IMG/VR virus record: IMGVR_UViG_3300042515_001753
Span: 1-64,000 of that record
Strand: one strand, 5' to 3'
Length of the DNA stretch: 64,000 nt
Shown here: piece by piece, positions 1-31,499 of the stretch
Layout: each line of letters begins with the position of its first letter
Position numbering within the stretch: the stretch's first letter is position 1
Notes under the pieces: generated by a model
What the model saw: the letters and a program-made list of their open reading frames with translations, nothing else
What the model was told of the DNA's origin: nothing
The model's database searches: none
Made by a program: the position numbers and the translations under genes

Positions 1-1
1 T

Positions 2-3000
2 ATTGAATATAATCTGCTTATTAATACCAGCAACAGGACCAATTAATCCTTGAAGACCTTGTGTTCCTTGAATACCTTGAAGACCCTGAAGTCCTTGTGT
101 TCCTTGAGTACCTGTACCTCCTGTTCCTCCAGCAGTACCTTGAAGACCCTGAAGTCCTTGTGTTCCTTGAGTACCTGTACCTCCTGTTCCTCCAGCAGTA
201 CCTTGAAGACCCTGAAGTCCTTGTGAACCAACTGTACCTTGTGAACCTACTGTACCCTGAAGTCCCTGAAGACCTTGAGTTCCTTGTGAACCTACTATAC
301 CCTGAAGTCCCTGAAGACCTTGAGTTCCTTGTGAACCTACTATACCCTGAAGTCCCTGAAGACCTTGTGAACCAACTGTACCTTGTGAACCTACCGTACC
401 TTGAGTCCCCTGAAGACCTTGAAGACCTTGAGTTCCTTGTGAACCAACTGTACCTTGAGTCCCCTGAAGACCCTGACGACCTTGAAGACCTTGAGTTCCT
501 TGTGCTCCTTGAGTACCCTGAAGTCCTTGAGTACCCTGAAGTCCTTGAGTACCTTGAGTACCTTGAGTACCCTGGAGTCCTTGAATACCTTGAGTACCTT
601 GAGTTCCCTGGAGTCCTTGAGTACCTTGGAGTCCTTGAGTACCTTGAGTACCTTGAGTACCTTGAGTACCCTGGAGTCCTTGTGTACCTTGAGTACCTTG
701 AGTACCTTGAGTACCCTGGAGTCCTTGTGTACCTTGAGTACCTTGAGTACCTTGAGTACCCTGGAGTCCTTGAGTACCTTGAGTACCTTGAGTACCTTGT
801 TGACCTTGAGTTCCTTGAGTACCCTGGAGACCTTGAGTACCTTGAGTACCTTGAGTACCTTGTTCTCCCTGAAGACCTTGAGTACCTTGTGTTCCCTGCT
901 GACCTTGAAGACCTTGAGTACCCTGGAGACCCTGAGTACCTTGTATTCCCTGTAGGGCTGCATCCTGAATTGTTGATTTATAAATTTGGTCAGTTGCATT
1001 ATCATAAATTAAAATCAAATCATCAGAAGTTACACTACTTGTAGATATTTGACCTTTAATCGCTTGTTTTGTAACAATACCATCAAGGTATGGAGAAGTT
1101 ACAGTAGTATCAGTAACTTGCATTCCACCAGCAGCAAGTCTTACTCCATAAGGAACTTGAGTTGAACCAATACCTACACCATAATTAAATAACCAAGCAT
1201 CAGTTCCAAGTCCAGAATAAGTTCCAGACCTAACCCACATTATTTGCTTGTAACTTTCTGGAAGTGTATTAGCAGTACCAACTTGGAATGGAACTAATGG
1301 GATTCCTTCGGTAGATGCAATAGCAATACCACCGTGATTTGCGGTCGTATCAGTCGGTAAAGATATTGTTGTTAAACCCAGGACAATTTCTTTGTCCTGA
1401 ACTCTTAGTTCTGTTGCACTAATATAAACTGATGTACCACCAATTGTTAGATTATTTTGAACATTTAAATCATAGACATTTAATTGAGTCCCATCAAAAG
1501 TTAAATTATTAGAACCAGTTGGATTATTAGAACCATCTTTATAAACAACTTGGTTTGCAGAACCTGCTACTGGACCGGTTTGACCTTGAAGACCCTGGAG
1601 TCCTTGTGTACCTTGAGTACCTTGAGTACCTTGAAGACCCTGGAGACCCTGAGCACCCTGAGCACCCTGAGTACCTTGAGTACCTTGAGTACCTTGAAGA
1701 CCCTGAAGTCCTTGAAGTCCTTGAAGACCCTGAGTACCTTGAGTTCCTTGTGAACCTACTGTACCTTGTAGACCCTGAGTGCCTTGAGTCCCCTGAAGAC
1801 CCTGAGTACCTTGAGTACCTTGAGTACCTTGAGTACCTTGAGTACCCTGCTCACCCTGTAGTCCCTGAGTACCCTGGAGTCCTTGTGTACCTTGAGTACC
1901 TTGAAGACCCTGGAGACCCTGAGCACCCTGAGCACCCTGAGTACCTTGAGTTCCTTGTGAACCTACTGTACCTTGTAGACCCTGAGTGCCTTGAGTCCCC
2001 TGAAGACCCTGAAGACCTTGAGTACCTTGAGTACCTTGAGTACCCTGCTCACCCTGTAGTCCCTGAGTACCCTGGAGTCCTTGTGTACCTTGAGTACCTT
2101 GAGTACCTTGAAGACCCTGAGCACCTTGAGTACCCTGCTCACCCTGTAGTCCCTGAGTACCCTGGAGACCTTGTGTACCTTGAGTACCTTGAGTACCCTG
2201 AGTACCCTGAGTACCTTGAGTACCTTGAAGACCCTGAGTACCCTGAGTACCTTGAGTACCTTGAAGACCCTGAAGTCCTTGAAGACCTTGAGTACCTTGA
2301 AGACCTTGAGTACCTTGGAGACCTTGAGTACCTTGAAGTCCTTGAAGACCCTGAGTACCTTGAGTACCCTGAGTACCTTGAAGACCTTGTATTCCCTGAG
2401 TACCCTGAGTACCTTGAAGACCTTGTATTCCCTGAGTACCCTGAGTACCTTGAAGACCTTGAGTTCCCTGGAGTCCTTGCTCACCCTGGAGTCCTTGAGT
2501 TCCTTGCGTACCTTGAGTACCTTGCGTACCTTGAGTACCTTGCTCACCCTGGAGTCCTTGAGTACCTTGCTCACCCTGGAGTCCTTGAGTACCTTGAGTG
2601 CCTTGATGACCTTGAAGACCCTGAGTACCTTGAGTGCCTTGATGACCTTGAGTACCTTGTTCTCCTTGAAGACCCTGAAGTCCTTGAGTACCTTGTTCTC
2701 CTTGAAGACCTTGAGTACCTTGAAGACCTTGAGTACCTTGTTCCCCTTGAAGACCCTGAGTACCTTGAGTACCCTGAGTACCTTGAAGACCTTGTATTCC
2801 CTGAGTACCCTGAGTACCTTGAAGACCCTGAAGTCCTTGAAGACCTTGAGTACCTTGAAGACCTTGAGTACCTTGTTCTCCTTGAAGACCCTGAAGTCCT
2901 TGAGTACCTTGTTCTCCTTGAAGACCTTGAGTACCTTGAAGACCTTGAGTACCTTGAAGACCTTGAGTACCTTGTTCTCCTTGAAGACCCTGAAGACCTT

Positions 3001-4720
3001 GTATTCCCTGAGTACCCTGAGTACCTTGAAGACCTTGAGTACCTTGTTCTCCTTGAAGACCCTGAAGTCCTTGAAGACCCTGAAGTCCTTGAAGACCTTG
3101 AAGACCTTGAGTACCTTGTTCCCCTTGAAGACCCTGAAGTCCTTGAAGACCTTGAGTACCTTGAAGACCTTGAGTACCTTGAAGACCTTGAGTACCTTGT
3201 TCCCCTTGAAGACCCTGAAGTCCTTGAAGACCCTGAAGACCCTGAAGTCCTTGAGTACCTTGAAGACCTTGCAACGCAGCATTTTGAATTGTTGCCTTTC
3301 CTACAACTGTCCCACTTACATCATAAAGAGCAATAAAGTCTCCACTCTGCGGATCGGCAATTAAAGGAAGACCATTAATATCAAGATTTGATGCAGTTCC
3401 ATTAAAACGAGTCGCAGTTACTTCAGTATCAGTAATCTGAACATTACCAACTGCCAAACGAACTCCATAAGGAACTTGAGTTGAACCAATACCAACACCA
3501 TAATTAAATAACCAGGCATCAGTATTCAATCCGGCAAAAGCACCGGACTTGAACCACATTATTTTCTTATATGTGGCAGGTAATGTTTCAATACCAACAA
3601 TATTGAGACTTACAAGAGGAGTTCCTTCGGTAGATGCAATTGCAATACCACCGTGATTTGCCGTTGTATCTGTGGAAACATCATTACCCTGAGAATCGGT
3701 TGTAAATCCAAGAATAATGTCCGCATCACTAACTCTAAAGTTTTCAACAAGAATATAACCTGCTGTACCACCAACAGTAATATTTCCAGTTACATTAAGA
3801 TTATTATTAACCTGTAAATCATTTCCAATCGTTACATTTCCAGGTAAAGTTGGATTTGTTGAAATTGAAACAACAGGAGTTGAACTTTCTCCCGTTCCTC
3901 CTGATACATAAATCTGATTTGCCGCCCCAGAAATTGTCTGAATATAATCTCCAAATGTATCAGTTCCTAACCCAACACTATTTGGTTGAATAGTTGCTGC
4001 TAATGATACATTACCAGTTCCATCAAAACTAATTGGAGAAGCAACAACATCTCCAGTAATTTCAAAAGTTCTTGGAGTGACTAATTGAATTGCAGATGCG
4101 GCAATGCCTGTCAAGCTGCCTACAAATCCACCAAGAGATGTAGTTATACCTGTAATATAAGCGTCTCCAGAAATAGTAATCCCAGATTCGGTTGTTTCAA
4201 GTTTTACATTATTATTATAATAAAGTTGAGCACCACCATTAGGATTAAAAATTGCGCTTGTAACTGTGGCAAAAGGATCCGCAATTTGAATGTTGTTGCC
4301 TAAAATATAAAGAGTAGATCCAGAAATATCACGAATTATTGAACTATTACCATTAGAATAAATCTCTAAATCTGGATTATCACCAAAATATAATCTATCA
4401 TTAGATCTAAAATATGCATTATTTTCAAATGTTGTAATTCCAGAAATAATTAAATCCGAATTAATACCAACTCTACCACCAAAAGTAGAAACTCCCGTTA
4501 CATTTAAATTATCTGCAGTAAGATCATCAAAAAATACATCATCGGTTACATATAAATCACCAACAATATTTGTATCACCAATAACTTTAAGAGAATATTG
4601 TTCGGCATTTGTCGTTCCAATACCTACCTTTCCCGTTACCTGAATAACAGTCTTATCTTCACTATAGGATGATAAACCTACTTTGAGTTCTCTTTGCCTA
4701 CCGCTGACGTACTTATCCAT
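2..4720 (-). CDS. Giant collagen-like tail fibre/virion protein, 3' end beyond window (>1570 aa)
   Basis: ATG at 4720 (MDKYVSGRQRELKVGLSSYSEDKTVIQVTGKVGIGTTN). Frame checked at 3280, 1576 and 949. Two long Gly-X-Gln blocks and VGIGT/GIGST fibre motifs. Absent from the ORF track, consistent with no stop inside the window. Confidence 0.85.
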   Translation of the reverse strand, partial: MDKYVSGRQRELKVGLSSYSEDKTVIQVTGKVGIGTTNAEQYSLKVIGDTNIVGDLYVTDDVFFDDLTADNLNVTGVSTFGGRVGINSDLIISGITTFENNAYFRSNDRLYFGDNPDLEIYSNGNSSIIRDISGSTLYILGNNIQIADPFATVTSAIFNPNGGAQLYYNNNVKLETTESGITISGDAYITGITTSLGGFVGSLTGIAASAIQLVTPRTFEITGDVVASPISFDGTGNVSLAATIQPNSVGLGTDTFGDYIQTISGAANQIYVSGGTGESSTPVVSISTNPTLPGNVTIGNDLQVNNNLNVTGNITVGGTAGYILVENFRVSDADIILGFTTDSQGNDVSTDTTANHGGIAIASTEGTPLVSLNIVGIETLPATYKKIMWFKSGAFAGLNTDAWLFNYGVGIGSTQVPYGVRLAVGNVQITDTEVTATRFNGTASNLDINGLPLIADPQSGDFIALYDVSGTVVGKATIQNAALQGLQGTQGLQGLQGLQGLQGLQGEQGTQGLQGTQGLQGTQGLQGLQGLQGEQGTQGLQGLQGLQGLQGLQGLQGEQGTQGLQGTQGTQGIQGLQGLQGEQGTQGLQGTQGLQGTQGLQGEQGTQGLQGLQGEQGTQGLQGTQGLQGLQGLQGTQGTQGIQGLQGTQGTQGTQGLQGEQGTQGLQGTQGLQGEQGTQGLQGLQGEQGTQGHQGTQGTQGLQGHQGTQGTQGLQGEQGTQGLQGEQGTQGTQGTQGTQGTQGLQGEQGLQGTQGLQGTQGTQGIQGLQGTQGTQGIQGLQGTQGTQGTQGLQGLQGTQGLQGTQGLQGTQGLQGLQGLQGTQGTQGTQGLQGTQGTQGTQGTQGTQGTQGLQGTQGLQGEQGTQGAQGLQGTQGTQGTQGLQGTQGLQGEQGTQGTQGTQGLQGLQGTQGTQGLQGTVGSQGTQGTQGAQGAQGLQGLQGTQGTQGLQGTQGLQGEQGTQGTQGTQGTQGTQGLQGTQGTQGLQGTVGSQGTQGTQGLQGLQGLQGLQGTQGTQGTQGAQGAQGLQGLQGTQGTQGTQGLQGLQGQTGPVAGSANQVVYKDGSNNPTGSNNLTFDGTQLNVYDLNVQNNLTIGGTSVYISATELRVQDKEIVLGLTTISLPTDTTANHGGIAIASTEGIPLVPFQVGTANTLPESYKQIMWVRSGTYSGLGTDAWLFNYGVGIGSTQVPYGVRLAAGGMQVTDTTVTSPYLDGIVTKQAIKGQISTSSVTSDDLILIYDNATDQIYKSTIQDAALQGIQGTQGLQGTQGLQGQQGTQGTQGLQGEQGTQGTQGTQGLQGTQGTQGQQGTQGTQGTQGLQGTQGTQGTQGTQGLQGTQGTQGTQGTQGLQGTQGTQGTQGTQGLQGTQGLQGTQGTQGIQGLQGTQGTQGTQGLQGTQGLQGTQGAQGTQGLQGRQGLQGTQGTVGSQGTQGLQGLQGTQGTVGSQGTVGSQGLQGLQGIVGSQGTQGLQGLQGIVGSQGTQGLQGLQGTVGSQGTVGSQGLQGLQGTAGGTGGTGTQGTQGLQGLQGTAGGTGGTGTQGTQGLQGLQGIQGTQGLQGLIGPVAGINKQIIFN
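35..949 (-). repeat. Collagen block 2, about 101 Gly-X-Y triplets
   Basis: Same 9-bp units, same frame as block 1. Confidence 0.95.
1571..3268 (-). repeat. Collagen block 1, about 188 Gly-X-Y triplets (mostly GTQ/GLQ)
   Basis: 9-bp unit (ccttgagta / ccttgaaga / ccctgagta) tandemly repeated. Confidence 0.95.
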
Positions 4721-4723
4721 TTT

Positions 4724-5071
4724 TTAGTTAAGAGTTTCGAGAATACTGGATACAAACTTAATATCAGTATTATTACTTGCAGATAATTTTAAAACATCAC
4801 TAGATTCAAGAACCAACTTTCCGGATAATAAATTTGCACTATCACTTGAGGAGATTGGATATGATTTAAGAAGTTCGGTAGTCACCGCAATTCCTGTTCT
4901 CTTATTAGTTCTTTGATGAGATAAAGAAACTATTTGAGTATCTGACCCTACATTTGTTGCCTGTGCCAAAAGAACAACACCAGTATATCCAACGGGTGCA
5001 GTATAAATTCCAACCGTGTTTGTTGACCCAACAGAAGTAATTGTTTTAAATATATTAAGTGCTAGTGCCAT
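4724..5071 (-). CDS. Small virion structural protein (hypothetical)
   Basis: 115 aa, beta-rich, between fibre genes. Confidence 0.6.
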   Translation of the reverse strand: MALALNIFKTITSVGSTNTVGIYTAPVGYTGVVLLAQATNVGSDTQIVSLSHQRTNKRTGIAVTTELLKSYPISSSDSANLLSGKLVLESSDVLKLSASNNTDIKFVSSILETLN

Positions 5072-5074
5072 TCT

Positions 5075-7240
5075 TTAATCTCCTCCTAGTGCTAAAATAA
5101 ATGGTGTAAGGGTCGAAAACAAACTCTTAGAATAAAATGTACCAGAGATAGTACCAGTCTGTTGATTAATTACAACACCATCACCAATTCTAAAGTTCCC
5201 AGATTGGTCCGTACTTGTAAATACAACTAATCCTCCATTACGAGCATCAGTTTCATTTTCCTGAATTGGAACACCACCAGTTGTAGGAAGAGCAGTTGCA
5301 ATTTCAGTACCAGAACCAATATATTCTAATGAATGCCCAGATGCCAAAATACGACTCTGTTTAAAAAATGGCACCTGAGTTCCGATTCCAACTTCATAAG
5401 GAACATTATCATTTACCGTAACAGTACAAATACCGGCAGAAATTGGAGTAGAACTTAAGATTGAATAATAAGTTGGAACCATTACGGGAACCGCTATTGC
5501 TGTATTTATCCCAACTTCAGGACCGGTTAATGTAACTGTCGGAGTAGAAACATATCCCCTACCACTAGAAACCATATCAATTGCAACCACCGACCCATCT
5601 TTAACTTCCGCAACTGCTTGTGCAGTAACTCCAAAATTAGTTTCTGGATCAGATATAGTAATTTCGGGAGAAACAGAATATCCAGACCCACCAATACTTA
5701 CCAATATTTTTTCTACTGTATAGAAAAGTTCACCAAAATAAATCACCTGACCGTCAAAGGGTCTTATGACATTAATCTTTGCAGTTCCACCAGAGGCATA
5801 AGTATGGGAAAATGTAGAAACTCCAGTATAAACTGAGAATGATGTAGATGAAGCAATACTCACGACTTCAAAAATGTATCCATAATTTCCAGAAGGAAAA
5901 TTGGAAATAGTGCTAATTGATACAATACCATTATTCACATAATTATGAGTAATTGTAGAAGTCCCTACATTTACCACAAACTGATTAGATGCCGGTATTG
6001 ATATTACATTAAAAATATGATTAGAAGCTCCATTATTATCTCCCGGTGCTGGTGGAAAATATGCCGTAGATATACCACCACCAGAATTACAAGAAAATAC
6101 CAAATTAGACATCGTAACACTGATACCAACAGTAAAATTATGATTAGTAGATGTCGTTACGGTCAAAATACCAGTCGTATTAGTATAATTTGCAGTACTA
6201 ATATTATAATTAGTAACTGCATTTACCGAAGAACAGGTAAATTTCAATCCGGAAATTGAAACTCCCATTCCAACATTAAAATTATGTGGAGCATTTAAAG
6301 TAATTGTAGAGAGTCCTGTAGTATTATTATAAAGTGCGTTTGTAACATTTAAAGTTGGAGTATTTAAATTCAATACAAAAGTATCTGAATTTTCTGCCGC
6401 AGCACTTGTGACTATTCCCGTATATTTCAAGGGTCCAATACCATCCGCAACTAGTCCAAAATTACCAAAAGAGGAGTTTGAGTTTGTAAGGTCACATGCA
6501 GCACCAGACCCACAAAAAACTGCAACATCATCGCAAATAGTAAAGAGAGAAACTAACTGAGCATATCCCTCATTGGTCATCGATGCTCCAATACCACCCT
6601 GATTATATTGAGTATAGGAGTCAAGAACCATACTCTTAGTTGGTCCTATGGCATCATTTCCATCAATCTTTAATCCAATACTGTTTGGAATAAAGTTTGT
6701 ACAGTTCTGAATATAAGGTGATTGATTGAAGTATCCAATCTCTACTGGATTAAAGGCAAAAATTGCACCAGTATTTGCAGGTCCAACAAAGGACATTTCG
6801 GCAATATAATTTCCATTACTTACATAAAAAAGGTCTGCTTGATTTTGTGGAGTGACGGAGACCTCTCTTAAACTATCCCCAACAATACTAACTTGTTCGG
6901 GAATCTTAATTGGATTATTTTCTATATAACTTCCAGCACTAACCTTAATAACAGTTCCTGTTGTTGCTGCCTCAACTGCTCCTCGGATGGTTCGTTTTGC
7001 GTCTCCGAGTTTTTTTCCTGTATTTGTATCGCTTCCGTCTGTTGTGACATATAAAATATTTGTTACTGTTGCTCCGGCGCCGATGCGGATAATATCAGTT
7101 CCTATTCCAGTACGGTCCCTCCTTGCGGTTAATTCACCATCATAAGTGTTGTAGGCTAATTCTCCACTTAAGAGATTCTCTATTGTAGGTCTTTTACCTG
7201 GAACAGCAGACCTTCTAATCCTAATGGGGGTTCCGTCCAT
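5075..7240 (-). CDS. Tail fibre/baseplate-associated structural protein
   Basis: N-terminal IRIRRSAVPGKRP..GELAYNTYDG, YVTTDGSDTNTG motif, SGxGY repeats; late promoter TATAAATA at 7293-7300. Confidence 0.7.
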   Translation of the reverse strand: MDGTPIRIRRSAVPGKRPTIENLLSGELAYNTYDGELTARRDRTGIGTDIIRIGAGATVTNILYVTTDGSDTNTGKKLGDAKRTIRGAVEAATTGTVIKVSAGSYIENNPIKIPEQVSIVGDSLREVSVTPQNQADLFYVSNGNYIAEMSFVGPANTGAIFAFNPVEIGYFNQSPYIQNCTNFIPNSIGLKIDGNDAIGPTKSMVLDSYTQYNQGGIGASMTNEGYAQLVSLFTICDDVAVFCGSGAACDLTNSNSSFGNFGLVADGIGPLKYTGIVTSAAAENSDTFVLNLNTPTLNVTNALYNNTTGLSTITLNAPHNFNVGMGVSISGLKFTCSSVNAVTNYNISTANYTNTTGILTVTTSTNHNFTVGISVTMSNLVFSCNSGGGISTAYFPPAPGDNNGASNHIFNVISIPASNQFVVNVGTSTITHNYVNNGIVSISTISNFPSGNYGYIFEVVSIASSTSFSVYTGVSTFSHTYASGGTAKINVIRPFDGQVIYFGELFYTVEKILVSIGGSGYSVSPEITISDPETNFGVTAQAVAEVKDGSVVAIDMVSSGRGYVSTPTVTLTGPEVGINTAIAVPVMVPTYYSILSSTPISAGICTVTVNDNVPYEVGIGTQVPFFKQSRILASGHSLEYIGSGTEIATALPTTGGVPIQENETDARNGGLVVFTSTDQSGNFRIGDGVVINQQTGTISGTFYSKSLFSTLTPFILALGGD

Positions 7241-7305
7241 TTATAACATTCGGTATTTACCAAAATTAGACAGTATATACTGCCATTTGATTTATTTATA
7301 AAACC

Positions 7306-7677
7306 TCAAGAAGCATTATTTTTTCTTGGACGATAGGCATAAAGATTTGTGGGTAATGGAGGTTTCATCCATTCTTGTATTTTATCAAATCGTTCTTCAC
7401 TATAAAAATCTTGCTGAACATACCACAGTTTCCAGTGCTCGTGCCCCTTAGATTGATTACAGGAATGGCAAGAGCATACTACATTCGTAGTAGTATCTAA
7501 TCCACCTTTTGATTGAGGAACTATGTGGTCTATTGTAAGATTATCTTCGGACTCACAATAGGCACACTTATGATTCCAACTCTCTTTGATATCTTTTCTC
7601 CATATTCGTTTAGCATCCCCAGAACTTGCTGTACAAAGATTAAACAGATACTCTTTAGGCGAATGGAGAGGTCCCAT
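7306..7677 (-). CDS. HNH endonuclease (McrA-like)
   Basis: CAYC..LTIDHIVPQSKGG..NVVCSCHSCNQSKG. Confidence 0.9.
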   Translation of the reverse strand: MGPLHSPKEYLFNLCTASSGDAKRIWRKDIKESWNHKCAYCESEDNLTIDHIVPQSKGGLDTTTNVVCSCHSCNQSKGHEHWKLWYVQQDFYSEERFDKIQEWMKPPLPTNLYAYRPRKNNAS

Positions 7678-12781: not shown

Positions 12782-13573
12782 CTAACTTTGTGGCGGGGAT
12801 GGGTTTGTAATCCTACCAAGATATGGATCATAATTCATCAAGTCATCAATTTTCATATCATAACCCTGGCGTTCCCAAAAATGAAGAAGACCATCGTGAC
12901 TTTGACGATGAAAAACATCAATATGTTCTGGATGAATGGAAGAACCTAAAGCAATCTTATAAAGGAACAAAGGAATTGAAAAAGTATTACCAGAATTGTA
13001 AATCAAGTCATCAGCAACTGCTCTGGGCTTTACACCATTATCAAGTTTGTACTTATCTCCACGAACATGATGTCTTAGAATCTTTTCTGCATGATGTCGA
13101 GTAATCATATAAGCGGCAGTTGAAAAATCATTCACAAATCTCTTATGAAGTTTAACATGTAAATCACCGGTACAAATAATGGCAAGTTGAATTACATCAT
13201 AATCATAAGGAACTTTAGCAACAAAATCACTCCAAGTAAAGTTCCAGAATCTGACAAGTTGTAAATCTACATCATCTTCCATAATCACCGCATAGGGACT
13301 GTCAGAGGTCTCTATCCAGTGCTTGAGTGCCTTGAGATGAGAAGTTGTACATCCAATCTCACCAGAGGTCATATTGTCAGGATAGCGACCCTTAATGATG
13401 TCGCTCAGGTCATCTTCTCTTCCATCATAGGCAGAGATACGAGTATAGTTTTCTATCTCCCAGTACTTAAACTGCTCCTCCATATATTCCTTTCTTTCTG
13501 GTTGCCCATCAAGATTAAGATAATAAATAGGTCCAATATTCTTAAGTTTATATGCCGCTTTATTTTTGTCCAT
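12782..13573 (-). CDS. Glycosyltransferase family 25
   Basis: YYLNLD..ERK, GEIGCTTSHLKA, IMEDDV. Confidence 0.88.
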   Translation of the reverse strand: MDKNKAAYKLKNIGPIYYLNLDGQPERKEYMEEQFKYWEIENYTRISAYDGREDDLSDIIKGRYPDNMTSGEIGCTTSHLKALKHWIETSDSPYAVIMEDDVDLQLVRFWNFTWSDFVAKVPYDYDVIQLAIICTGDLHVKLHKRFVNDFSTAAYMITRHHAEKILRHHVRGDKYKLDNGVKPRAVADDLIYNSGNTFSIPLFLYKIALGSSIHPEHIDVFHRQSHDGLLHFWERQGYDMKIDDLMNYDPYLGRITNPSPPQS

Positions 13574-13579
13574 CGTAAA

Positions 13580-14425
13580 TTAAATTTTATTTAAATTGTA
13601 AGATTGATATTTTTTCAAGTATTTTTGAGACTGATAATATCTCTCTAGTTGTTTTTGATTTAGACTTTGTAAGTAATCCCACAACTCATTATTTCTCCTA
13701 ATGTGTGGATTACCAAAGCCAGAATTATGACCTCTAAAATGTTCTAGATGATATACATATGAATAATCAATTCTCCCAACATTATAACCTAAAATTTTAA
13801 AACGTAAATATCTTTCTTTGTCTTCCGGAGACCAAGAAATAAAGTTCTCATTTTCCATTCCGGCATTAATATAGGATTTTCTCTTAAAGAATTGAACATG
13901 TCCAAACTCAGACCTATAAATATTTGATTTTTTTTCTAAAATTGAAAAATCAAAATCATTATTAATAAAATCACTTACAAGTTCATCAGTTGTAAAAATT
14001 TGATACTGATAGTCTCCAAACCCATACGGATAGACTAAATCATAATTTTTTTCTACGATTAATTTTACTGCTTCTATACATGCCTCTGGTTTCAATAAAG
14101 CATCACAATCATAATTAACCACAACATCAGTTTTTACTTGATCTAGCATTTCGTTTAGAATTTTCATTCTATGAAATTCTAAACTATCAGATTCTTCAAA
14201 CAAATATATAAGATTATTAATTTCATCTTCATCCAAAAATTCTTTAATTTGTTCTATAACATACTCTTGAACAAGAGGTTTAGAATCAACTTCTTTTAAG
14301 ATTACTTTGGTGTTAAAAGTTTTAAGAAGATAGCAAAGAACTGTAGTAATATTTCTAGTTCTATCACCAGAATCAATCCTAATAGGAATTATGAAAGTAC
14401 AATCTGATAAGTCTATTTTTTTCAT
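13580..14425 (-). CDS. GT-A fold glycosyltransferase (GT2/GT7-like)
   Basis: FIIPIRID, NYDCD (DxD), GMENENFISWSPED. Confidence 0.8.
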   Translation of the reverse strand: MKKIDLSDCTFIIPIRIDSGDRTRNITTVLCYLLKTFNTKVILKEVDSKPLVQEYVIEQIKEFLDEDEINNLIYLFEESDSLEFHRMKILNEMLDQVKTDVVVNYDCDALLKPEACIEAVKLIVEKNYDLVYPYGFGDYQYQIFTTDELVSDFINNDFDFSILEKKSNIYRSEFGHVQFFKRKSYINAGMENENFISWSPEDKERYLRFKILGYNVGRIDYSYVYHLEHFRGHNSGFGNPHIRRNNELWDYLQSLNQKQLERYYQSQKYLKKYQSYNLNKI

Positions 14426-15204
14426 ATTTTAATCCACTCATCCAAATATAAATCTTGTGTTTGATTTTTAGAAGTATTACTATCTTCCCCAAACCACCGC
14501 AAAGGAGCAATCACTTTTTTAGATTTTGCTAACCATGCACCCCACCAAGAGAATGAAGAATTAGCAATAATATGATAATCGCACATACTCATCAAACACA
14601 AATCAATAAATCCATTATGAGATTCTGAAATAATAAATCGTTCCGATTCAAATAATTTTTGCGACTGACACCAACCAACATCATCGGAAAAAATTATTAC
14701 AGGAATATCAGAATCAAAGTGTTCTAGTGCTCGTTCATAATACGAAAGACTGCAAGGAGGGTGATTCGTAGAATTAGATACATAATCAGTTCGTCTTACA
14801 TGCAGAGCAATAATTTCATCAAACTTAAAATTAGATACACAGGGTTCTAAAATATAATTTTTAAATGTAAAATCTTCTCTGATACTATCTTCAATATGTT
14901 TGAAATATTTTTCACTCTGATAATATCCATGTAAATTTACATTATCTGGACAGTTATCAACATACTCTGGGTCATAGTGAAATTGTTTTTCGGGATAAAA
15001 ATCTGCAGGAATGAATCCAATATTCTTTACACTCTTCATCTCAAAAACATCAAAGAGTTTATTATCTTTCCATTTATCACCATAATCAGTTTTAGGAATA
15101 CAAAAATCATATCCTTTAGTTGCAGAAATACCTCTCAGTGAGGCATATTGAAACATTTGATTTGCCAGTCTACCATACTGACCAAGATAATTAAATCCAA
15201 TCAT
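14422..15204 (-). CDS. Alpha-1,2-fucosyltransferase, GT11
   Basis: GRLANQMFQYA, GYYQSEKYF, HVRRTDY, NSSFSWWGAWL. Confidence 0.92.
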   Translation of the reverse strand: MIGFNYLGQYGRLANQMFQYASLRGISATKGYDFCIPKTDYGDKWKDNKLFDVFEMKSVKNIGFIPADFYPEKQFHYDPEYVDNCPDNVNLHGYYQSEKYFKHIEDSIREDFTFKNYILEPCVSNFKFDEIIALHVRRTDYVSNSTNHPPCSLSYYERALEHFDSDIPVIIFSDDVGWCQSQKLFESERFIISESHNGFIDLCLMSMCDYHIIANSSFSWWGAWLAKSKKVIAPLRWFGEDSNTSKNQTQDLYLDEWIKI

Positions 15205-15208
15205 GCTA

Positions 15209-15997
15209 CTAAGAATAAAGAATAGTTTTTTTGTCAGCAGGAGAATGAATCATCCTTGCAGAAAAATCAAACTCATTATCAGGATAATTTCCAGGTTTTG
15301 CAAAGGAAGGATGCAGTATGTGGAAATCATCATAATTTTCAATCCTATATCTATTTAAATGACTTTCATCATGTGCCGCTGCCATTACATTATTTTCCAA
15401 ATCTTTTTTGATTCTTTCATCAAGTTCATCAATTAATTTAAAAATTTCTGGAATTTTACCACCCCAAATACATCCTTGAAGATATACATCGTCCTTTTCC
15501 TCTTCTTCAGTTACACATGATAAGGATCTTGTATTTCTTTCAAAAGGTAAATATTGAAGAAATTTACTCCAGTTAGCACTAAAAGTCGGATGTTGTACTC
15601 CGAAAAATGGTTTTTCATCATTGAAAAAATCTTGATATGTAATTAACTGATCGCAACAATACATATCAGCATCAAAGTATACATACCAATCATAATCCTT
15701 TAATTGGCTTTCAATTTTTTTAATCTCTCCAAATCTTCTCAATCCACCGATACTATTATACATCAAATTATACCAATTATCTGAAGAATAATCTGATGTG
15801 GTAATTTCAATATTTTCAGATGATGGTATAATTTTAATATTGTCTGGAATGTCATCTCCAAGATCTCCATCTGTAAAAACAAAAAAATCTTTCTGACATT
15901 CTGGAACAAAATATTCCATCAGTGTCTCATAATACTTTGGAAAGAATTTAAGATAATTTCCCGTTCCAATAAAGTTTATTGCTATTTTTTTATTCAT
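15209..15997 (-). CDS. Glycosyltransferase family 6 (alpha-1,3-Gal/GalNAc transferase-like)
   Basis: FIGTGNY, FVFTD, FDAD, HDESHLNRY; start moved to the ATG at 15997. Confidence 0.88.
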   Translation of the reverse strand: MNKKIAINFIGTGNYLKFFPKYYETLMEYFVPECQKDFFVFTDGDLGDDIPDNIKIIPSSENIEITTSDYSSDNWYNLMYNSIGGLRRFGEIKKIESQLKDYDWYVYFDADMYCCDQLITYQDFFNDEKPFFGVQHPTFSANWSKFLQYLPFERNTRSLSCVTEEEEKDDVYLQGCIWGGKIPEIFKLIDELDERIKKDLENNVMAAAHDESHLNRYRIENYDDFHILHPSFAKPGNYPDNEFDFSARMIHSPADKKTILYS

Positions 15998-15998
15998 A

Positions 15999-16946
15999 TT
16001 AACTATTGGTAATGATTTTTTCAACTGAAGAAATATAATATTTTTGAAGTATCTCTTTCCAATCAAACTGCTTTGAATATTCTACAATTTCTTTTCTATT
16101 ATTTACAGCATATTTCCTATTCTCAATAATTTTATTCTCAACATACTCCAAATCGGAGATTTTGTTTTCGGGAATGATTGTAATAAATTCTTTATTAATA
16201 TCTAAATTTGCTCTCCCCCATTCACAAACAACCACACCAAGTCCAGCGGAAAGTGCCTCCATACAAACAAGTGGATGTGCTTCGCCATCGGAAAGTAAAA
16301 CAAGGTTTCCGTATTGAGTTAATTCATTATATAATGTATCTTTTCCCCACTCACCCAAATAATTTTTAGAAGTATCAAATCTAGAATCAGCAATATTTCC
16401 AGCATACCAAAGACTAGGAATTGTCTGAAACATAAACTGACGCTTCCTATAATCTACCTTTGCAAGATAGATTGAACGATCTGGATACTCTGGATTATCT
16501 ACATAATTAAATTTTCCTCTGTTTACTCCATTTGGTGTTAAGAACAACTTGTCTTCAGGCAGATTCAATAATACTTTATACATATTTTGAATTCCCTCAG
16601 ACAGACAGAATGTATTCGGTCTGAGTCGAGCAAAGTCATTAGCAATATTCACATATCCACCAAAGAGTTCAGGTCTTTCTAAGTAACCATAATGACTTGT
16701 AATTGCCTTTGGTTGTTGAATATGAGGATATAAAGTAATAAATTCATCATAATGAATGTGAACAAAATCAGATCCAAAAGAATTAACATCTTTTATAATC
16801 TGATTATAATCTTTAGTATTCACAATTTGAACTTGATGTCCTAGAGATTCTAAAGCAATTTTAGTGTCCCATATAAGAATTTCTACCGCACCCCAACCAA
16901 GAGGTGGAATAGGCATAATTCCAGGACCGATTAAAGATATTTTCAT
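15999..16946 (-). CDS. GT-B glycosyltransferase (GT4-like)
   Basis: IPPLGWGAVE, EAHPLVCMEALSAG. Confidence 0.85.
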   Translation of the reverse strand: MKISLIGPGIMPIPPLGWGAVEILIWDTKIALESLGHQVQIVNTKDYNQIIKDVNSFGSDFVHIHYDEFITLYPHIQQPKAITSHYGYLERPELFGGYVNIANDFARLRPNTFCLSEGIQNMYKVLLNLPEDKLFLTPNGVNRGKFNYVDNPEYPDRSIYLAKVDYRKRQFMFQTIPSLWYAGNIADSRFDTSKNYLGEWGKDTLYNELTQYGNLVLLSDGEAHPLVCMEALSAGLGVVVCEWGRANLDINKEFITIIPENKISDLEYVENKIIENRKYAVNNRKEIVEYSKQFDWKEILQKYYISSVEKIITNS

Positions 16947-17839
16947 AGATTCTTTTCAACCCATTCCTCTAATTTTACACTTGGATTCCAACCAAAAATT
17001 TTATTAATTTTTTTATTATTTGCAAGAGTAATTCTTGACTCTCCAGGTCTAGGTGCTAGATTAATAACATTATTCGAAATCATTCTTGCAATTTGATTAA
17101 TAGAATGATTTGTTCCGGTGCCGACATTATATACTTGCCCAAATGCTTCCCAATCTGGATTGGAAATAGCAGCCATCACATTTGCCTTCACAACATCACT
17201 AACATGAGTAAAGTCTCTCCGCTGATTACCATCACCAACGATAGTCAGAGGTTCTCCTGCTGCCCTCTGACGAAGAAAAATACCAATCACAGGAGCATAT
17301 TGTCCACGTAAAGGTTGACGCTCACCATAAACATTAAAGTATCTAAAGCAAACAGTGGGAAGACCATAAAGACTAGTATACATTTTGCATAGTTTTTCGC
17401 CATTTACTTTTGAAACTGAATAAGGATTTAAACAGTCATCAGGTTGTGTTTCAATATTTGGTGATTGATTCATTCCATATGCAGAAGAGGTTGAGGAGTA
17501 CATCAATCGCTTTACCCCTGCTTCTCTTGAGCACTGAAGAACTGTACATGTACCAACAGAGTTAATACTTACTGCTTGAATAGGATTTTCAATTGCAGGT
17601 TGAATACGTGCCTCTGCAGCAATATGGAAGACATAATCTACTCCATCGTATAGGGGGCGAGTGTTTTCATAATCACGAATGTCATACTTATAATTTTGCG
17701 CTTTATCATTCCAGTAAAACTGTTCATGAACATCCGAATATTCATTATCAATTACAACAACCTCGTGCCCCATTTCAAGAAGACAATCTACTAGATTTGA
17801 TCCGATAAATCCTGCGCCGCCAGTAACTAAACTTTTCAT
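16943..17839 (-). CDS. NAD-dependent nucleotide-sugar epimerase/dehydratase
   Basis: VTGGAGFIGS, YSVSK, RYFNVYG. Confidence 0.92.
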   Translation of the reverse strand: MKSLVTGGAGFIGSNLVDCLLEMGHEVVVIDNEYSDVHEQFYWNDKAQNYKYDIRDYENTRPLYDGVDYVFHIAAEARIQPAIENPIQAVSINSVGTCTVLQCSREAGVKRLMYSSTSSAYGMNQSPNIETQPDDCLNPYSVSKVNGEKLCKMYTSLYGLPTVCFRYFNVYGERQPLRGQYAPVIGIFLRQRAAGEPLTIVGDGNQRRDFTHVSDVVKANVMAAISNPDWEAFGQVYNVGTGTNHSINQIARMISNNVINLAPRPGESRITLANNKKINKIFGWNPSVKLEEWVEKNL

Positions 17840-18642
17840 ACCATTTCTTGAAATAAACAAAGATGATTTTTACCATTAACTCTATGAAACTTAGTAAAAA
17901 GATTCTCTTTTGTTTTACAGAGATATCCAATTGCTATTTGTTCATTATTTACATTTTTATTCTTAATCATATAATCCAAAACATGATCGATTTCATTGCT
18001 GATATTTTTAATAGCAATTTTATTTCCACCAAACATGCTTCCACAGATAAAAGACCGATTATCCCAAAAATAACTTTCGGATAATGTTTGAGAATTTACA
18101 AGATCAGGATAACATTCAGTATTATACTGGATTAAGAAGGTATTGTCAATTTGTTCTAATGCTTGAAGAGTATCTTCACTGGGGTAATCATTTTCAAGAT
18201 TGCAGTCATATAAAAATCGACTGGCACCTGCGTCTAACCAAAAGAAAAATTTAGAGTCAAAAGAATTAATCTCAGATGCTTTTTTCAACCACTTAAATTT
18301 AGAATATTGAATGACAGGATACATTGAGTAGTTGCACTCAACTCTATTTGTGTCTGCCATATTTTCTTTATAAAATTCAGAATCGATAACTTCTTGAATT
18401 GAATCTTTCAGATGAAAATATGGTATTTGTTCCAAAGGTTCAACAATAATTTCGGTCGGTAAATCTTGCCTGACTTCTTTAATAGTTTCAACCAAAGACT
18501 CTTCTGTAAAAATAATAAATGGACATTTTACACTTAATGTCTTTGAAAACCATTCTAGATAATCTTCCCAACTTCTATTATCATCTCTTTGTAGTTCTTG
18601 AACATTATATAAAGAAGTAACAATTACAAAATCAGTTTTCAT
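17836..18642 (-). CDS. HtrL/WlaTC-like glycosyltransferase
   Basis: IVTSLY, YSKFKWL, FWLDAG, NNEQ. Confidence 0.7.
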   Translation of the reverse strand: MKTDFVIVTSLYNVQELQRDDNRSWEDYLEWFSKTLSVKCPFIIFTEESLVETIKEVRQDLPTEIIVEPLEQIPYFHLKDSIQEVIDSEFYKENMADTNRVECNYSMYPVIQYSKFKWLKKASEINSFDSKFFFWLDAGASRFLYDCNLENDYPSEDTLQALEQIDNTFLIQYNTECYPDLVNSQTLSESYFWDNRSFICGSMFGGNKIAIKNISNEIDHVLDYMIKNKNVNNEQIAIGYLCKTKENLFTKFHRVNGKNHLCLFQEMV

Positions 18643-19204
18643 TTTTATAGAGGTAGATAATATCGTCATACTTATTTTTATTTGCTCTCAAATCAACAAT
18701 TTCAAAAGTATCAAGATATTCAGAAACTTTCCATCCTGGATTATCATCAACATCTTCAATAATATAATAACCACCTGGTTTAAGTTTTGATTTAAGAATA
18801 TTCCAAGTTTTTAATGTAAGATCCGGATTATGGGAAGCATCATCAATAATTAAATCAAATTGTGGGCAGTTTTCAAATGAACTTGGATCATCTTGAGACC
18901 CTTCTGGTAGAAAAATAAATCTTTCTTTCTCTTCTTCTGTAAGTTGGAGATTAGAATATTCTTTATCAAATCCATAGATTTTAGTTTTATCTGAAAAAAT
19001 ATCTCTCCACATTCTCAAACTATAACCAGAAGATACTCCTACCTCTAAAACACAAAGATCTTTATTGTCTTTAACTTTTTCGAAAACTTCCGGATAAAAA
19101 AGTTCATAAGAATGATCTGATCCCTTATCACTACAACCAGTCCAGGGGGTAGAACTATAATGTTGAATGATTTCTTTTGCTTTTTGTTTGAATGATTTTG
19201 CCAT
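18632..19204 (-). CDS. Class I SAM methyltransferase
   Basis: SDKGSDHSY, LEVGVSSG, IIDDASH, LKPGGYYIIED. Confidence 0.85.
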   Translation of the reverse strand: MAKSFKQKAKEIIQHYSSTPWTGCSDKGSDHSYELFYPEVFEKVKDNKDLCVLEVGVSSGYSLRMWRDIFSDKTKIYGFDKEYSNLQLTEEEKERFIFLPEGSQDDPSSFENCPQFDLIIDDASHNPDLTLKTWNILKSKLKPGGYYIIEDVDDNPGWKVSEYLDTFEIVDLRANKNKYDDIIYLYKNEN

Positions 19205-19205
19205 T

Positions 19206-20084
19206 TTATTTCATATTTTTAAAATGTTCAAAGTTAACATGCTCAACCCAATTTGGCCACATATTAACTTGTAAAGGTTTGCAAGATTCGTAGTCAAAAT
19301 TATGAATATAAAATTTGGAATCAATTTTATATTTCTCATACCAATCTGTTGCTTGTTTATATATGATCGCTCCAAAGTCGCCCAATCCGATTTTTAAATT
19401 TTTCCTAGAGCAAACTTCTATGCAATAGTCTCTTACATGAATTACACCATTTTCATAAACACTTGGAATAAATTCATACCATCCAGATAAAAACTTTTCC
19501 ATAGATTCTGGGTTTCCCAAGAAAAACCAATCGCAAGGATTATTAGGAAACTCTCCGGCATACAAATGACCACCATTCATTGAACTTTGAAAATATATTG
19601 TATCTGACTCTAGAGTAACCTGGGATAATATATCTTTAATTGGTTTAGTTAAAATAACATCTGGTCTAGATTTAATAACGACATCGATATTATTATATTT
19701 TTTAGTTTGCAAAAATGCTTGATAGTTGGAATAAGTTTGACTTAGAAGACCATATAAAACTATTGGAGTAATGATTTTATAATGCTCTATACTTTCACCC
19801 TTCCAAACATCAAAATTAAATTTTTTAAAGAATGTAATATCAAAATCTTTATGCTTTTCAACACTACAATCAGTTACCTTATATCTTTCTATAAATTGTT
19901 TATCTAAATTTTCATCACCAAACCGATCAGTAAACCATAACTTATAAACTTTTTTATGATAAGATTTATCCCACCAAAGATGAGAGCAAACCTTATCATT
20001 TTCATCTATCTGATAATTGGAAAAATAACTAATATTTTCATCATAAAAAATAGGTTGTCCAGAAAATAAAAAAGCGCAATTCAT
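19206..20084 (-). CDS. Putative glycosyltransferase-like protein
   Basis: FSGQP start, KSRPD, DWFFLG; paralogue of 24643-25386. Confidence 0.55.
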   Translation of the reverse strand: MNCAFLFSGQPIFYDENISYFSNYQIDENDKVCSHLWWDKSYHKKVYKLWFTDRFGDENLDKQFIERYKVTDCSVEKHKDFDITFFKKFNFDVWKGESIEHYKIITPIVLYGLLSQTYSNYQAFLQTKKYNNIDVVIKSRPDVILTKPIKDILSQVTLESDTIYFQSSMNGGHLYAGEFPNNPCDWFFLGNPESMEKFLSGWYEFIPSVYENGVIHVRDYCIEVCSRKNLKIGLGDFGAIIYKQATDWYEKYKIDSKFYIHNFDYESCKPLQVNMWPNWVEHVNFEHFKNMK

Positions 20085-22159: not shown

Positions 22160-22160
22160 A

Positions 22161-28217: not shown

Positions 28218-28260
28218 TGAGGATATTGATAAATTTTATGCTACTTTCATTAGAAATAAT

Positions 28261-31014: not shown

Positions 31015-31088
31015 TCGGGCATAGAGGATTTGAACCTCTGACCTTTCCGGCCCAAGCGGAACGCGCTACCAAACTGCGCTAATGCCCG
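31015..31088 (-). tRNA. tRNA-Pro(TGG)
   Basis: Cloverleaf; anticodon loop CTTGGGC. Confidence 0.93.
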
Positions 31089-31132
31089 TATTTCTTTATG
31101 TATAATACCATGACTACCCCATCATGTCAATA

Positions 31133-31215: not shown

Positions 31216-31226
31216 AAAATAAGTCC

Positions 31227-31487: not shown

Positions 31488-31499
31488 CGCTATAATTAA

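What the first reader, a model, noticed from the sequence alone, without database searches (positions are those of the whole stretch)
2..4720. Proline-poor Gly-X-Gln collagen fibre built from duplicated modules
Seen: the layout is [domain]-[~188 triplets]-[domain]-[~101 triplets]-[next domain]. Both collagen blocks start with TIQ(N/D)AALQG and end with GPVAG. The globular domains share TDTTANHGGIAIASTEG..DAWLFNYGVGIGSTQVPYGVRLA (about 1140-1360 and 3460-3675). Y is almost always Gln and X mostly Thr or Leu. Inference: a very long segmented fibre with internal trimerisation knots, whose length can change by 9-bp slippage.
Basis: partly seen in the sequence, partly recalled or inferred. Interest (0 to 1): 0.6.

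Follow-up and report, generated by a model that had tools for sequence, protein, structure and literature searches.

The report
Giant segmented collagen-like cyanophage fibre
The window holds the first half of a roughly 3,335-residue gene from a freshwater T4-like cyanophage; it encodes a probably trimeric, half-micrometre fibre made of proline-free, uncharged Gly-X-Gln collagen rods joined by a repeated, uncharacterised trimer-forming node domain, a known kind of phage part in an extreme and unstudied form.

Summary
On the minus strand (4720 to 2) one open frame encodes 484 aa, 189 unbroken Gly-X-Y triplets, 206 aa, 102 triplets, then the start of another domain. Y is Gln in 272 of 291 triplets, X is mostly Thr or Leu, and there are 2 Pro. 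The 206-aa spacer is a 50%-identical copy of residues 264-484.

The gene does not end in the window. The contig breaks at the end of a 149-bp internal exact repeat. Other IMG/VR contigs, identical wherever they overlap the gene, complete it to 3,335 aa:
- six collagen blocks of 189/102/54/64/99/44 triplets, about 474 nm of helix;
- four copies of the node domain;
- a C-terminal Peptidase_S74 intramolecular chaperone.

Three copies of the node are predicted to form an intertwined trimer (score 0.90, best control 0.00). The node has no Pfam family and no match to a solved fold. The gene sits behind a tailspike-like gene, in an order conserved in Synechococcus phages S-SKS1 and S-SRM01.

At least 240 related loci exist. 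Genes with otherwise identical sequences differ only by clean in-frame indels of 9 to 162 bp that copy adjacent repeat units.

The triple helix itself and the fibre's place on the virion remain inferred.

The parts
2..4720 (-). 5' 4,719 nt (aa 1-1573) of the giant fibre gene. ATG at 4718-4720. The frame runs off the window and off the contig 43 nt later.
   Evidence: identical over 4,763 nt to L007 and L015
3932..4720 (-). N-terminal region, aa 1-263. It holds the conserved N-terminal peptide (M.KY.S.RQ..LK.G.SSY ... VTGKVGIGT) and a fibre-shaft-like stretch. It is the presumed attachment end.
   Evidence: PHROG tail fibre / virion structural families. phmmer hit to cyanophage P-SCSP1u fibre gp28, PDB 8i4m, E 3.2e-6. 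The N-terminus is shared with S-SKS1 SWZG_00010 and metagenomic relatives.
3269..3931 (-). Node domain copy 1 (aa 264-484), immediately N-terminal to collagen block 1. It ends in ATIQNAALQ.
   Evidence: 50% identity to copy 2, E 7e-63; HMM hit at aa 265-476
1568..3268 (-). Collagen block 1: 189 uninterrupted Gly-X-Y triplets (aa 485-1051). Y is Gln in 185. About 162 nm if triple-helical.
950..1567 (-). Node domain copy 2 (aa 1052-1257). It starts AGSANQVVYKDGSNNPTGSNNLTFDG directly after the GPV triplet. The core carries TANHGGIAIASTEG and TDAWLFNYGVGIGSTQ.
   Evidence: Alignments A1 and A2. Predicted intertwined homotrimer, 0.90 against controls 0.00. AF2 monomer pLDDT 79.8. No solved-fold match.
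32..949 (-). Collagen block 2: 102 uninterrupted triplets (aa 1258-1563). Y is Gln in 87. About 88 nm. It contains young tandem duplications: a 63-bp unit x2.4 at 100% (73-225) and a 45-bp unit x2.9 at 98% (237-367).
1..106 (-). First copy of a 149-bp exact internal repeat (gene nt 4615-4763; second copy at gene nt 6073-6221, outside the window). The contig ends exactly at its last base, so this is an assembler break, not a gene end.
   Evidence: G000 and G001 both stop there, and L023 starts at the second copy
4724..5071 (-). 115-aa gene between the tailspike-like gene and the fibre gene, with 3-nt spacers. It is conserved in the same position in S-SKS1 and S-SRM01. Function unknown; it may be an assembly factor or adaptor.
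   Evidence: phrog_1276; synteny
5075..7240 (-). 721-aa tail-fibre/tailspike-like gene, first gene of the presumed operon.
   Evidence: phrog_17885 'tail fiber protein', E 1e-203; 76% DNA identity to S-SRM01; sequence
7293..7300 (-). TATAAATA, a T4-type late-promoter-like motif 53 nt upstream of the 721-aa gene's ATG.
   Evidence: Weak evidence: 12 sites in the window against 6.8 expected.

Best explanation
The window carries the 5' half of one gene of about 10 kb (3,335 aa) from a freshwater T4-like cyanophage. The gene encodes a homotrimeric, segmented, collagen-like virion fibre, most likely a host-recognition fibre attached at the tail or baseplate.

Proposed mechanism; shown means computed here, inferred means my reading:
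- Three chains are brought together and held in register by the C-terminal Peptidase_S74 intramolecular chaperone and by four copies of an intertwined trimeric node domain. The chaperone domain is shown. Its self-cleavage after folding is inferred from the family. The trimer is a prediction only.
- Five of the six Gly-X-Gln blocks are followed directly by a conserved post-collagen module after a GPV triplet, and the last block by the C-terminal domain (shown). This follower would nucleate C-to-N zippering of that block into a triple helix (inferred from how collagens fold).
- The result would be a beads-on-a-string rod with segments of about 162, 88, 46, 55, 85 and 38 nm, about 0.47 micrometre of helix in all (inferred).
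- The N-terminal 263 aa would dock on the virion and the distal end would contact the host (inferred).
- With almost no Pro, no Lys or Asp and no KGE/KGD triplets, helix stability would have to come from Gln at Y and Thr at X, through hydrogen bonding or hydration and possibly glycosylation, and from the clamping nodes (inferred).
- Block length evolves fast by gain and loss of tandem units of 9n bp, which keeps the Gly register. This is shown in relatives.
For: - Sequence anatomy.
- Pfam Collagen: E 1e-136.
- Extension of the gene: L007 is identical over 4,763 nt and continues to 3,127 aa. A 127-nt overlap joins it to the far end of G001. L023 reproduces the last 1,294 aa of the joined model with 0 mismatches.
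- C-terminus: Peptidase_S74, E 8e-15, with an S-D-E-R-L-K motif, plus many tail-fibre PHROGs.
- Node trimer: score 0.90 against best control 0.00, pLDDT 90, about 845 contacts. The first AF2 monomer model (33-row alignment) was poor, pLDDT 55, which could reflect an obligate oligomer or just the shallow alignment; a 68-row alignment gave 79.8.
- Context: the order HNH gene, tail-fibre gene, small gene, giant gene is conserved in S-SKS1 and S-SRM01. There the homologue keeps the node domain but has other fibre repeats in place of collagen.
- Phage identity: DNA polymerase 84.5% identical to S-SRM01.
- Family: 242 related loci in IMG/VR and 480 protein hits, many ending in PF13884.
- Length variation: clean 9n-bp indels between otherwise identical genes.
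- Assembly: no exact repeat of 100 bp or more lies wholly inside blocks 1 and 2, and the independent assemblies are identical wherever they overlap.
Against: - There is no experimental evidence for a triple helix. Thr at X ranks low and Pro is absent in host-guest stability scales (recalled, not checked here), and no known stabiliser (Hyp, Pro, salt bridges, Thr at Y) is present.
- Virion location is not established. The PHROG label 'baseplate wedge subunit' is transferred annotation, and no T4 baseplate or fibre Pfam family matches.
- No proteomic or EM data exist for this uncultured phage.
- The trimer score comes from a predictor used outside its calibration (three copies, my own alignment).
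- The central 1,458 nt between the two 149-bp repeat copies rests on one contig (L007). Short-read assemblies can mis-size tandem repeats.
- Read laying returned only fragmented Logan contigs, so repeat length could not be checked against reads.
Confidence: 0.72

Rival explanations
1. It is a virion fibre but not a tail fibre: a head, neck or collar filament (like T4 whiskers or the head filament of some flagellotropic phages) or a capsid decoration. It would serve long-range capture or environmental sensing rather than being the primary receptor-binding fibre.
For: - The extreme length (about 0.47 micrometre) exceeds typical long tail fibres.
- No homology to T4 gp34-37 or to baseplate Pfam families.
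- The genome of the identical relative G001 has a second Gly-X-Gln collagen gene elsewhere, so several fibre types exist.
Against: - The gene follows a tailspike-like gene and precedes a small tail-fibre-like gene.
- The N-terminal shaft matches a cyanopodovirus tail fibre.
- S74-terminated proteins are mostly tail fibres or spikes.
Confidence: 0.2
2. The Gly-X-Gln blocks are not collagen triple helices. They would be flexible, largely disordered or PPII-like tethers (entropic springs) between trimeric nodes, or another glycine-rich PPII assembly.
For: - Composition lacks every published stabiliser: Pro 0.5%, charged residues 2.3%, 0 KGE/KGD. Published viral collagens have about 22% Pro at X, 38% Lys/Arg at Y and abundant KGD (PMC3368898; PMC11923368).
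- (Gly-Pro-Thr)10 is a random coil unless glycosylated (PMC11923368).
- A relative (P0004) has Ala at every third Gly position.
Against: - Gly periodicity is perfect over 189 triplets, and every indel in relatives preserves the triplet register. That argues for selection on a structure that needs Gly at every third residue.
- The blocks are bracketed by predicted trimers that would hold three chains in register.
- Gln at Y is among the more favourable non-imino residues (recalled).
Confidence: 0.15
3. The long blocks, or the 10-kb gene as a whole, are partly assembly artefacts of a low-complexity repeat, and the true gene is shorter or differently joined.
For: - Four contigs break inside this gene.
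- Logan contigs shatter across the repeats.
- The segment between the two 149-bp repeat copies is carried by one contig only.
- Some length differences among relatives involve perfect tandem copies that assemblers can collapse.
Against: - Assemblies from different samples agree base for base over 4,763 nt and over the last 1,294 aa.
- The longest exact repeat wholly inside blocks 1 and 2 is 97 bp.
- The frame stays open through 10 kb.
- Dozens of related complete ORFs have the same multi-block architecture.
Confidence: 0.07

Closest known systems
Collagen-like phage tail fibre proteins (Smith et al. 1998 'Bacteriophage collagen'; P-SSM2 orf028, PMC1079782; E. coli O157 prophage EPclA/B, PMC3368898)
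   Same: A phage structural gene with long Gly-X-Y runs flanked by non-collagen trimerising domains, and a presumed or shown trimeric side or tail fibre. EPclA was shown to be a trimer with a collagen CD signal.
   Different: - Composition: EPcl proteins have 48% Pro at X and 31% Lys/Arg at Y. Here Pro is 0.5% and Lys is 0, with Y = Gln at 86% over the full gene (93% in the window).
- Size: six blocks and 552 triplets, against one short block.
- A repeated internal node domain with no Pfam family.
- A C-terminal S74 chaperone.
Giant modular fibre proteins of cyanophages S-SKS1 (SWZG_00010, 1,727 aa) and S-SRM01 (gp333, 1,540 aa), PHROG 1469, annotated 'baseplate wedge subunit'
   Same: The same gene position, a shared node domain (55-57% identity) and, for S-SKS1, a similar N-terminus.
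   Different: These isolates have no collagen. Between and around the nodes they carry tandem repeats of about 30 aa or of 10-15 aa. In the window's gene the spacers are Gly-X-Gln blocks.
Fibres and spikes with a C-terminal intramolecular chaperone (Pfam PF13884 Peptidase_S74: K1F endosialidase, T5 L-shaped tail fibre)
   Same: A C-terminal S74 domain with a Ser ... Lys motif (SDERLK) at the end of a trimeric fibre protein.
   Different: The shaft is collagen-like, not a triple beta-helix. The domain lies outside the window and is known only from identical contigs.
Multi-segment animal collagens (FACITs such as type IX, where NC domains between COL segments set trimerisation and register; PMC8968730)
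   Same: The architecture: several triple-helical segments separated by non-collagenous trimer or register domains.
   Different: No homology. This would be a homotrimer, with no Hyp and no charged pairs, on a virus particle.
Bacillus BclA and other Thr-rich bacterial collagens
   Same: Pro-poor, Thr-rich collagen-like filaments with hypervariable triplet number. Glycosylation of Thr is the proposed stabiliser.
   Different: BclA has Thr at Y and a C1q-like C-terminal trimer. Here Thr is at X and Gln at Y, and no C1q domain was found.

Membership tests
Collagen triple-helix repeat proteins (Pfam PF01391) | Uninterrupted (Gly-X-Y)n of at least 6 triplets scoring above the Pfam gathering threshold | tested here: met
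   189 and 102 triplets; 445 bits against a cut-off of 27.2
Collagen triple-helix repeat proteins (Pfam PF01391) | An adjacent domain that trimerises the three chains | tested here: met
   By prediction only. Node x3 gives ipSAE 0.90 against best control 0.00, pLDDT 90. An S74 chaperone sits at the C-terminus of the full gene.
Collagen triple-helix repeat proteins (Pfam PF01391) | Actual triple-helical conformation (CD maximum near 220-225 nm, cooperative melting, rod seen in EM) | not testable with these tools
   Needs recombinant protein
Collagen triple-helix repeat proteins (Pfam PF01391) | A known stabilising composition: imino acids, Lys-Gly-Asp/Glu salt bridges, or Thr at Y | tested here: not met
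   Pro 0.5%, Lys 0, Asp 0, KGE/KGD 0, Thr at Y in 9 of 552 triplets. This is typical of collagens rather than strictly defining.
Phage fibres/spikes with an intramolecular chaperone (PF13884 Peptidase_S74) | C-terminal S74 domain above threshold with the Ser/Lys cleavage motif | tested here: met
   55.3 bits against a cut-off of 22; SDERLK present. It lies outside the window, on contigs identical to the window gene.
Phage fibres/spikes with an intramolecular chaperone (PF13884 Peptidase_S74) | Autoproteolytic release of the chaperone and presence of the mature protein in virions | not testable with these tools
   Uncultured phage
T4 baseplate wedge subunits (the label carried by PHROG 1469 and RefSeq homologues) | Detectable homology to a T4 wedge protein family (gp6/7/8/10/11/25/53) | tested here: not met
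   No Pfam family other than Collagen and S74 in any part of the protein. The label is transferred annotation only.
BclA/C1q-type bacterial collagens | C-terminal C1q/TNF-like globular trimer | tested here: not met
   No C1q hit in Pfam scans

The most novel reading that the evidence does not exclude
The Gly-(Thr/Leu)-Gln blocks are genuine triple helices of a compositional class not yet studied: no imino acids, no charge pairs, Gln ladders at Y. They would be made foldable by a previously undescribed intertwined trimer node that nucleates and registers each segment. Together these would build the longest phage fibre so far inferred (about 0.5 micrometre). Its reach would be tuned in nature by 9n-bp repeat gain and loss, and this would be a family-wide design in aquatic cyanophages.
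Probability: 0.35. Interest if true: 0.75.

Novelty: new variant of a known kind. Interest (0 to 1): 0.58.

Why it matters
- Collagen science: this is a natural, abundant family (over 240 loci, about 12,000 triplets surveyed) that lacks proline, hydroxyproline and the Lys-Gly-Asp/Glu salt bridges recently proposed as a near-universal folding aid (PMC11923368). If the blocks are triple-helical, they test the sequence rules for stability. They would also supply a ready-made modular system (node, rod, node) for recombinant collagen design.
- Phage biology: a half-micrometre segmented fibre with rapidly variable segment lengths would change the encounter geometry between a cyanophage and a host cell of about 1 micrometre. 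It would also be a hypervariable host-range locus, and it explains why assemblies of these genomes break there.
- Annotation: the 'baseplate wedge subunit' label on this family is unsupported.

Tried and rejected
- Read laying on four lake-water runs. Only Logan contigs were available and they shatter in the repeats. The many 'joints' are repeat artefacts, so this says nothing for or against length variation.
- Profile search of solved structures with the node alignment: 0 hits at E up to 10.
- Fold search with the node monomer model. Foldseek against PDB gave a best E of 0.79 (endosialidase NF). VIA-align gave a best Z of 2.8 (S16 gp37 tip). BFVD returned only the sequence homologues from S-SKS1 and S-SRM01. 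A monomer cut out of an intertwined trimer is a poor probe, so this does not prove a new fold.
- The first AF2 monomer model, from 33 sequences, was unusable (pLDDT 55).
- ESM Atlas feature search found only unnamed clusters.
- The P-SCSP1u gp28 match lies in the part of that fibre not resolved by cryo-EM, so it gives no structural information.
- Plus-strand ORFs inside the repeats (61-1044, 1555-3336 and others) were rejected as shadow frames of the repeat.
- The idea that the contig end is the gene end was rejected.
- The large representative-protein search was not used, as the operators advised.
Full report
**1. What is in the window**

The window is the reverse complement of bases 81,988-145,987 of a 146,030-bp linear IMG/VR viral contig, rated 68% complete.

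On the minus strand a single frame is open from the ATG at 4720 down to base 2. It stays open for the 43 further bases to the contig end. Its parts, from a script:
- 484 aa of non-collagen sequence.
- 189 uninterrupted Gly-X-Y triplets. Y is Gln in 185; X is Thr 86, Leu 73, Glu 15.
- A 206-aa domain.
- 102 uninterrupted triplets. Y is Gln in 87; X is Thr 50, Leu 30.
- The first 24 residues of another domain.

There are 2 prolines in 291 triplets, each in the final GPV triplet of a block. Both blocks are preceded by TIQ(N/D)AALQ and followed by AG. Pfam Collagen scores 445 bits against a cut-off of 27.2.

**2. The duplicated module**

BLASTP aligns residues 264-484 of the N-terminal part with the whole 206-aa spacer at 50% identity, E 7e-63. 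The repeating unit is therefore a node domain followed by a collagen block. The node domain has no Pfam family. It matches PHROG 1469, labelled 'baseplate wedge subunit'.

**3. The gene is truncated, and what the rest looks like**

A scan of IMG/VR with the node domain found 242 related stretches. Three contigs carry this same gene:
- L007 (69-kb contig) is identical to the window gene over all 4,763 available bases. It continues to 3,127 aa, still open at its end.
- L015 lies on a 233,886-bp contig rated 100% complete (G001). It stops at exactly the same base as the window's contig.
- L023 reproduces the last 1,294 aa of the joined model described below.

The stop point of the window's contig and of G001 is the last base of the longest exact internal repeat of the gene. 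That repeat is 149 bp: gene nt 4615-4763 and again 6073-6221. The contig end is therefore an assembler break, not a gene end.

The far end of G001 carries the end of the gene: a last collagen block, then 149 aa with a Peptidase_S74 'chaperone of endosialidase' domain (55 bits against a cut-off of 22) and an SDERLK motif. L007's last 127 bases equal the first 127 bases of that end. L023 matches the last 1,294 aa of the joined model with no mismatch, and it starts at the second copy of the 149-bp repeat.

The joined model:
- 3,335 aa in total.
- Collagen blocks of 189, 102, 54, 64, 99 and 44 triplets. That is 552 triplets, 50% of the protein, and about 474 nm at 0.286 nm per residue.
- Four node copies at aa 265-476, 1053-1249, 1682-1879 and 2393-2596.
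- A second type of spacer of 150-158 aa.

Every block is followed directly by a conserved module. Two blocks are followed by AGSANQ.VYKD...NLTFDG, which opens a node, and a third by the same opening motif leading into a 158-aa spacer (a 27-position partial HMM match). Two are followed by AGINKQIIFNNNNVSAGATNFVYD, and the last by the C-terminal domain.

Caveat: the 1,458 nt between the two 149-bp repeat copies rest on L007 alone.

**4. Is it an assembly artefact?**

Within blocks 1 and 2 the longest exact repeat is 97 bp. Assemblies from different samples agree base for base. The frame stays open for 10 kb, and dozens of complete related ORFs show the same multi-block design. I rate artefact as unlikely for the window part.

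Reads could not settle it. Only Logan contigs were on offer, and they fragment in the repeats. The stretch is held at 78-84% of its sampled words in nine lake-water metagenome runs from 2020 and 2024.

**5. Whose gene it is**

- The DNA polymerase in the window is 84.5% identical to that of the freshwater T4-like cyanophage S-SRM01 and 79% to that of S-SKS1.
- The window also holds ribonucleotide reductase, a helicase and 20 tRNA genes.
- The fibre gene is preceded, with 3-nt spacers, by a 115-aa gene (phrog_1276) and a 721-aa tail-fibre/tailspike-like gene (phrog_17885, E 1e-203).
- A TATAAATA motif sits 53 nt upstream of the 721-aa gene. This is a weak indicator of late expression.
- The order HNH gene, tail-fibre gene, small gene, giant gene is conserved in S-SKS1 and S-SRM01.
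- The giant proteins of those two phages keep the node domain, and S-SKS1 also the N-terminus. They carry tandem repeats of other kinds where this gene has collagen. The node is thus a reusable connector in modular fibres, and collagen is one of several shaft types.
- The N-terminal 263 aa match the tail fibre gp28 of cyanopodovirus P-SCSP1u (PDB 8i4m, E 3.2e-6). The matched part was not resolved in that structure (PMC10575957).

**6. Are the nodes trimerisation knots?**

Three copies of the 206-aa node, given with a 33-row alignment, were predicted as a complex. The score was 0.90 in three runs against 0.00 for the best of three controls, with pLDDT 90, about 845 contacts and 97% agreement between runs. 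The tool's calibration is that 20 of 30 solved homo-pairs and 1 of 23 monomers reach the mark. Those counts hold only roughly here, because I supplied my own alignment and three copies.

Nearly every residue is at the interface, which fits an intertwined fibre-type trimer. AlphaFold2 on the monomer gave pLDDT 55 with 33 sequences and 79.8 with 68 sequences.

No solved structure matches by sequence profile or by fold. Foldseek's best E was 0.79 (endosialidase NF), and VIA-align's best Z was 2.8 (S16 gp37 tip). BFVD returns only the S-SKS1 and S-SRM01 homologues. The weak hits are all phage fibres. A monomer taken out of a trimer is a poor probe, so I do not claim a new fold.

**7. Does length change by slippage?**

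Inside the window there are young higher-order duplications: a 63-bp unit x2.4 at 100% identity and a 45-bp unit x2.9 at 98%.

Among relatives, several sets of genes have 100% identical non-collagen parts over 1,000-1,400 aa but different block lengths. Examples are 63 vs 57, 93 vs 83, 63 vs 53, 81 vs 63, 98/93/88, 87 vs 95 and 13 vs 12 triplets.

In five pairs checked at the nucleotide level, the only difference in 2.6-7.9 kb is one clean indel of 9, 9, 54, 90 or 162 bp. The indel is 88-100% identical to the adjacent unit, except for one 9-bp case at 67%, and can slide 6-110 bp. That is the signature of slipped-strand or unequal exchange in tandem repeats.

Steps are multiples of 9 bp, from one to 18 triplets. 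Assembler collapse of perfect copies could account for some cases. For this gene itself no variation was seen.

**8. Composition in context**

Over the full gene:
- X is Thr 265, Leu 163, Ser 55.
- Y is Gln 477, Val 59.
- There are 6 Pro, 0 Lys, 0 Asp and 0 KGE/KGD triplets.

The trait is family-wide. In 61 distinct relatives (11,913 triplets) Y is Gln 74% and Thr 14%, and X is Thr 36%, Ala 16% and Leu 13%. Median Pro is 0.9% and median charged residues 1.5%.

Published surveys give, for viral collagens, 22% Pro and 35% Asp/Glu at X, and 38% Lys/Arg and 13% Gln at Y (PMC3368898, Table 4). KGD is 13% of all viral triplets and is proposed as a general folding aid (PMC11923368). This family lies outside those generalisations.

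From memory, not checked here: host-guest peptide scales (Persikov et al. 2000) place Gln among the better non-imino residues at Y and Thr among the poorer ones at X. Gln-rich recombinant bacterial collagens have been reported to form triple helices.

**9. What is known and what is new**

Known:
- Collagen-like phage fibre genes, including in T4-like cyanophages (P-SSM2 orf028, PMC1079782) and pelagimyophages (PMC7029224).
- Trimeric prophage collagens that have been characterised experimentally (PMC3368898).
- S74 chaperones.

Not described in anything I could find:
- The six-segment design of about 0.5 micrometre.
- The recurring node domain.
- The imino-free, uncharged Gly-X-Gln composition as a family trait.
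- The documented 9n-bp length polymorphism.

I file it as a new variant of a known kind.

**10. Limits**

The triple helix, the self-cleavage, the place on the virion and the host are all inferred.

Noticed in passing
window 12782-30184 (minus strand): An ~18-kb low-GC island (GC 0.27-0.35, against 0.35-0.45 elsewhere) of about 20 co-directional sugar-nucleotide and glycan genes. It includes GDP-mannose 4,6-dehydratase (E 3.8e-153), three NAD epimerase/dehydratases, GT25, GT11, GT6, GT1-like and GT7C-like transferases, HtrL/YibB, methyltransferases and a kinase-like gene. It lies 8 kb from the fibre gene. It might modify the host surface or glycosylate virion proteins such as the Thr-rich fibre; this was not tested.
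   Followed up: partly
window 31015-37809 (minus strand): An array of 20 tRNA genes. It includes Gly(TCC), Gln(TTG), Thr(TGT) and Leu(TAG), the four residues that make up nearly all of the collagen blocks. The set covers 18 of the 20 amino acids (Cys and Tyr are missing), so no specific link can be claimed.
   Followed up: no
L092:3287-7285 (minus), i.e. G001:C1 about 196287-200285: The complete relative genome has a second, unrelated-looking Gly-X-Gln collagen gene (1,332 aa, P0124). It has regular G-IAGQNAGQ-G interruptions, a different C-terminal domain and no S74 domain. It is not present on the window's contig.
   Followed up: partly
protein P0004 (metagenomic relative, 1,349 aa): Its 'collagen' blocks read GTQ-GxQ-ATQ, with Ala replacing Gly at every third Gly position over hundreds of residues. 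They are flanked by the same node domains. A regular Gly-to-Ala pattern is unexpected for a canonical triple helix and remains unexplained.
   Followed up: no
L091:8492-9118 and 1323-5577 (G001, downstream of the fibre gene's stop): A 2OG-Fe(II) oxygenase, a ferrochelatase-like gene and two glucosyltransferase/methyltransferase fusion genes follow the fibre gene and a small tail-fibre-like gene. Any role in modifying the fibre is speculative.
   Followed up: no
window 7306-7677 (minus strand): An HNH endonuclease gene lies directly upstream of the fibre operon, in the same place as in S-SKS1 and S-SRM01.
   Followed up: no
window 61-1044, 455-955, 1555-3336, 2171-3364 (plus strand) and 391-1005, 1963-3282 (minus strand): Long ORFs in other frames of the repeat (up to 593 aa). 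They are shadow frames of the 9-bp periodicity, not genes, and could mislead gene callers.
   Followed up: partly
window 5075-7240 (minus strand): The 721-aa upstream protein starts with a conserved fibre N-terminal motif (IRIRRSAVPGKRPT ... GELAYN). It has sequence features reminiscent of a right-handed beta-helix tailspike, but no Pfam family matched at E 0.01.
   Followed up: partly
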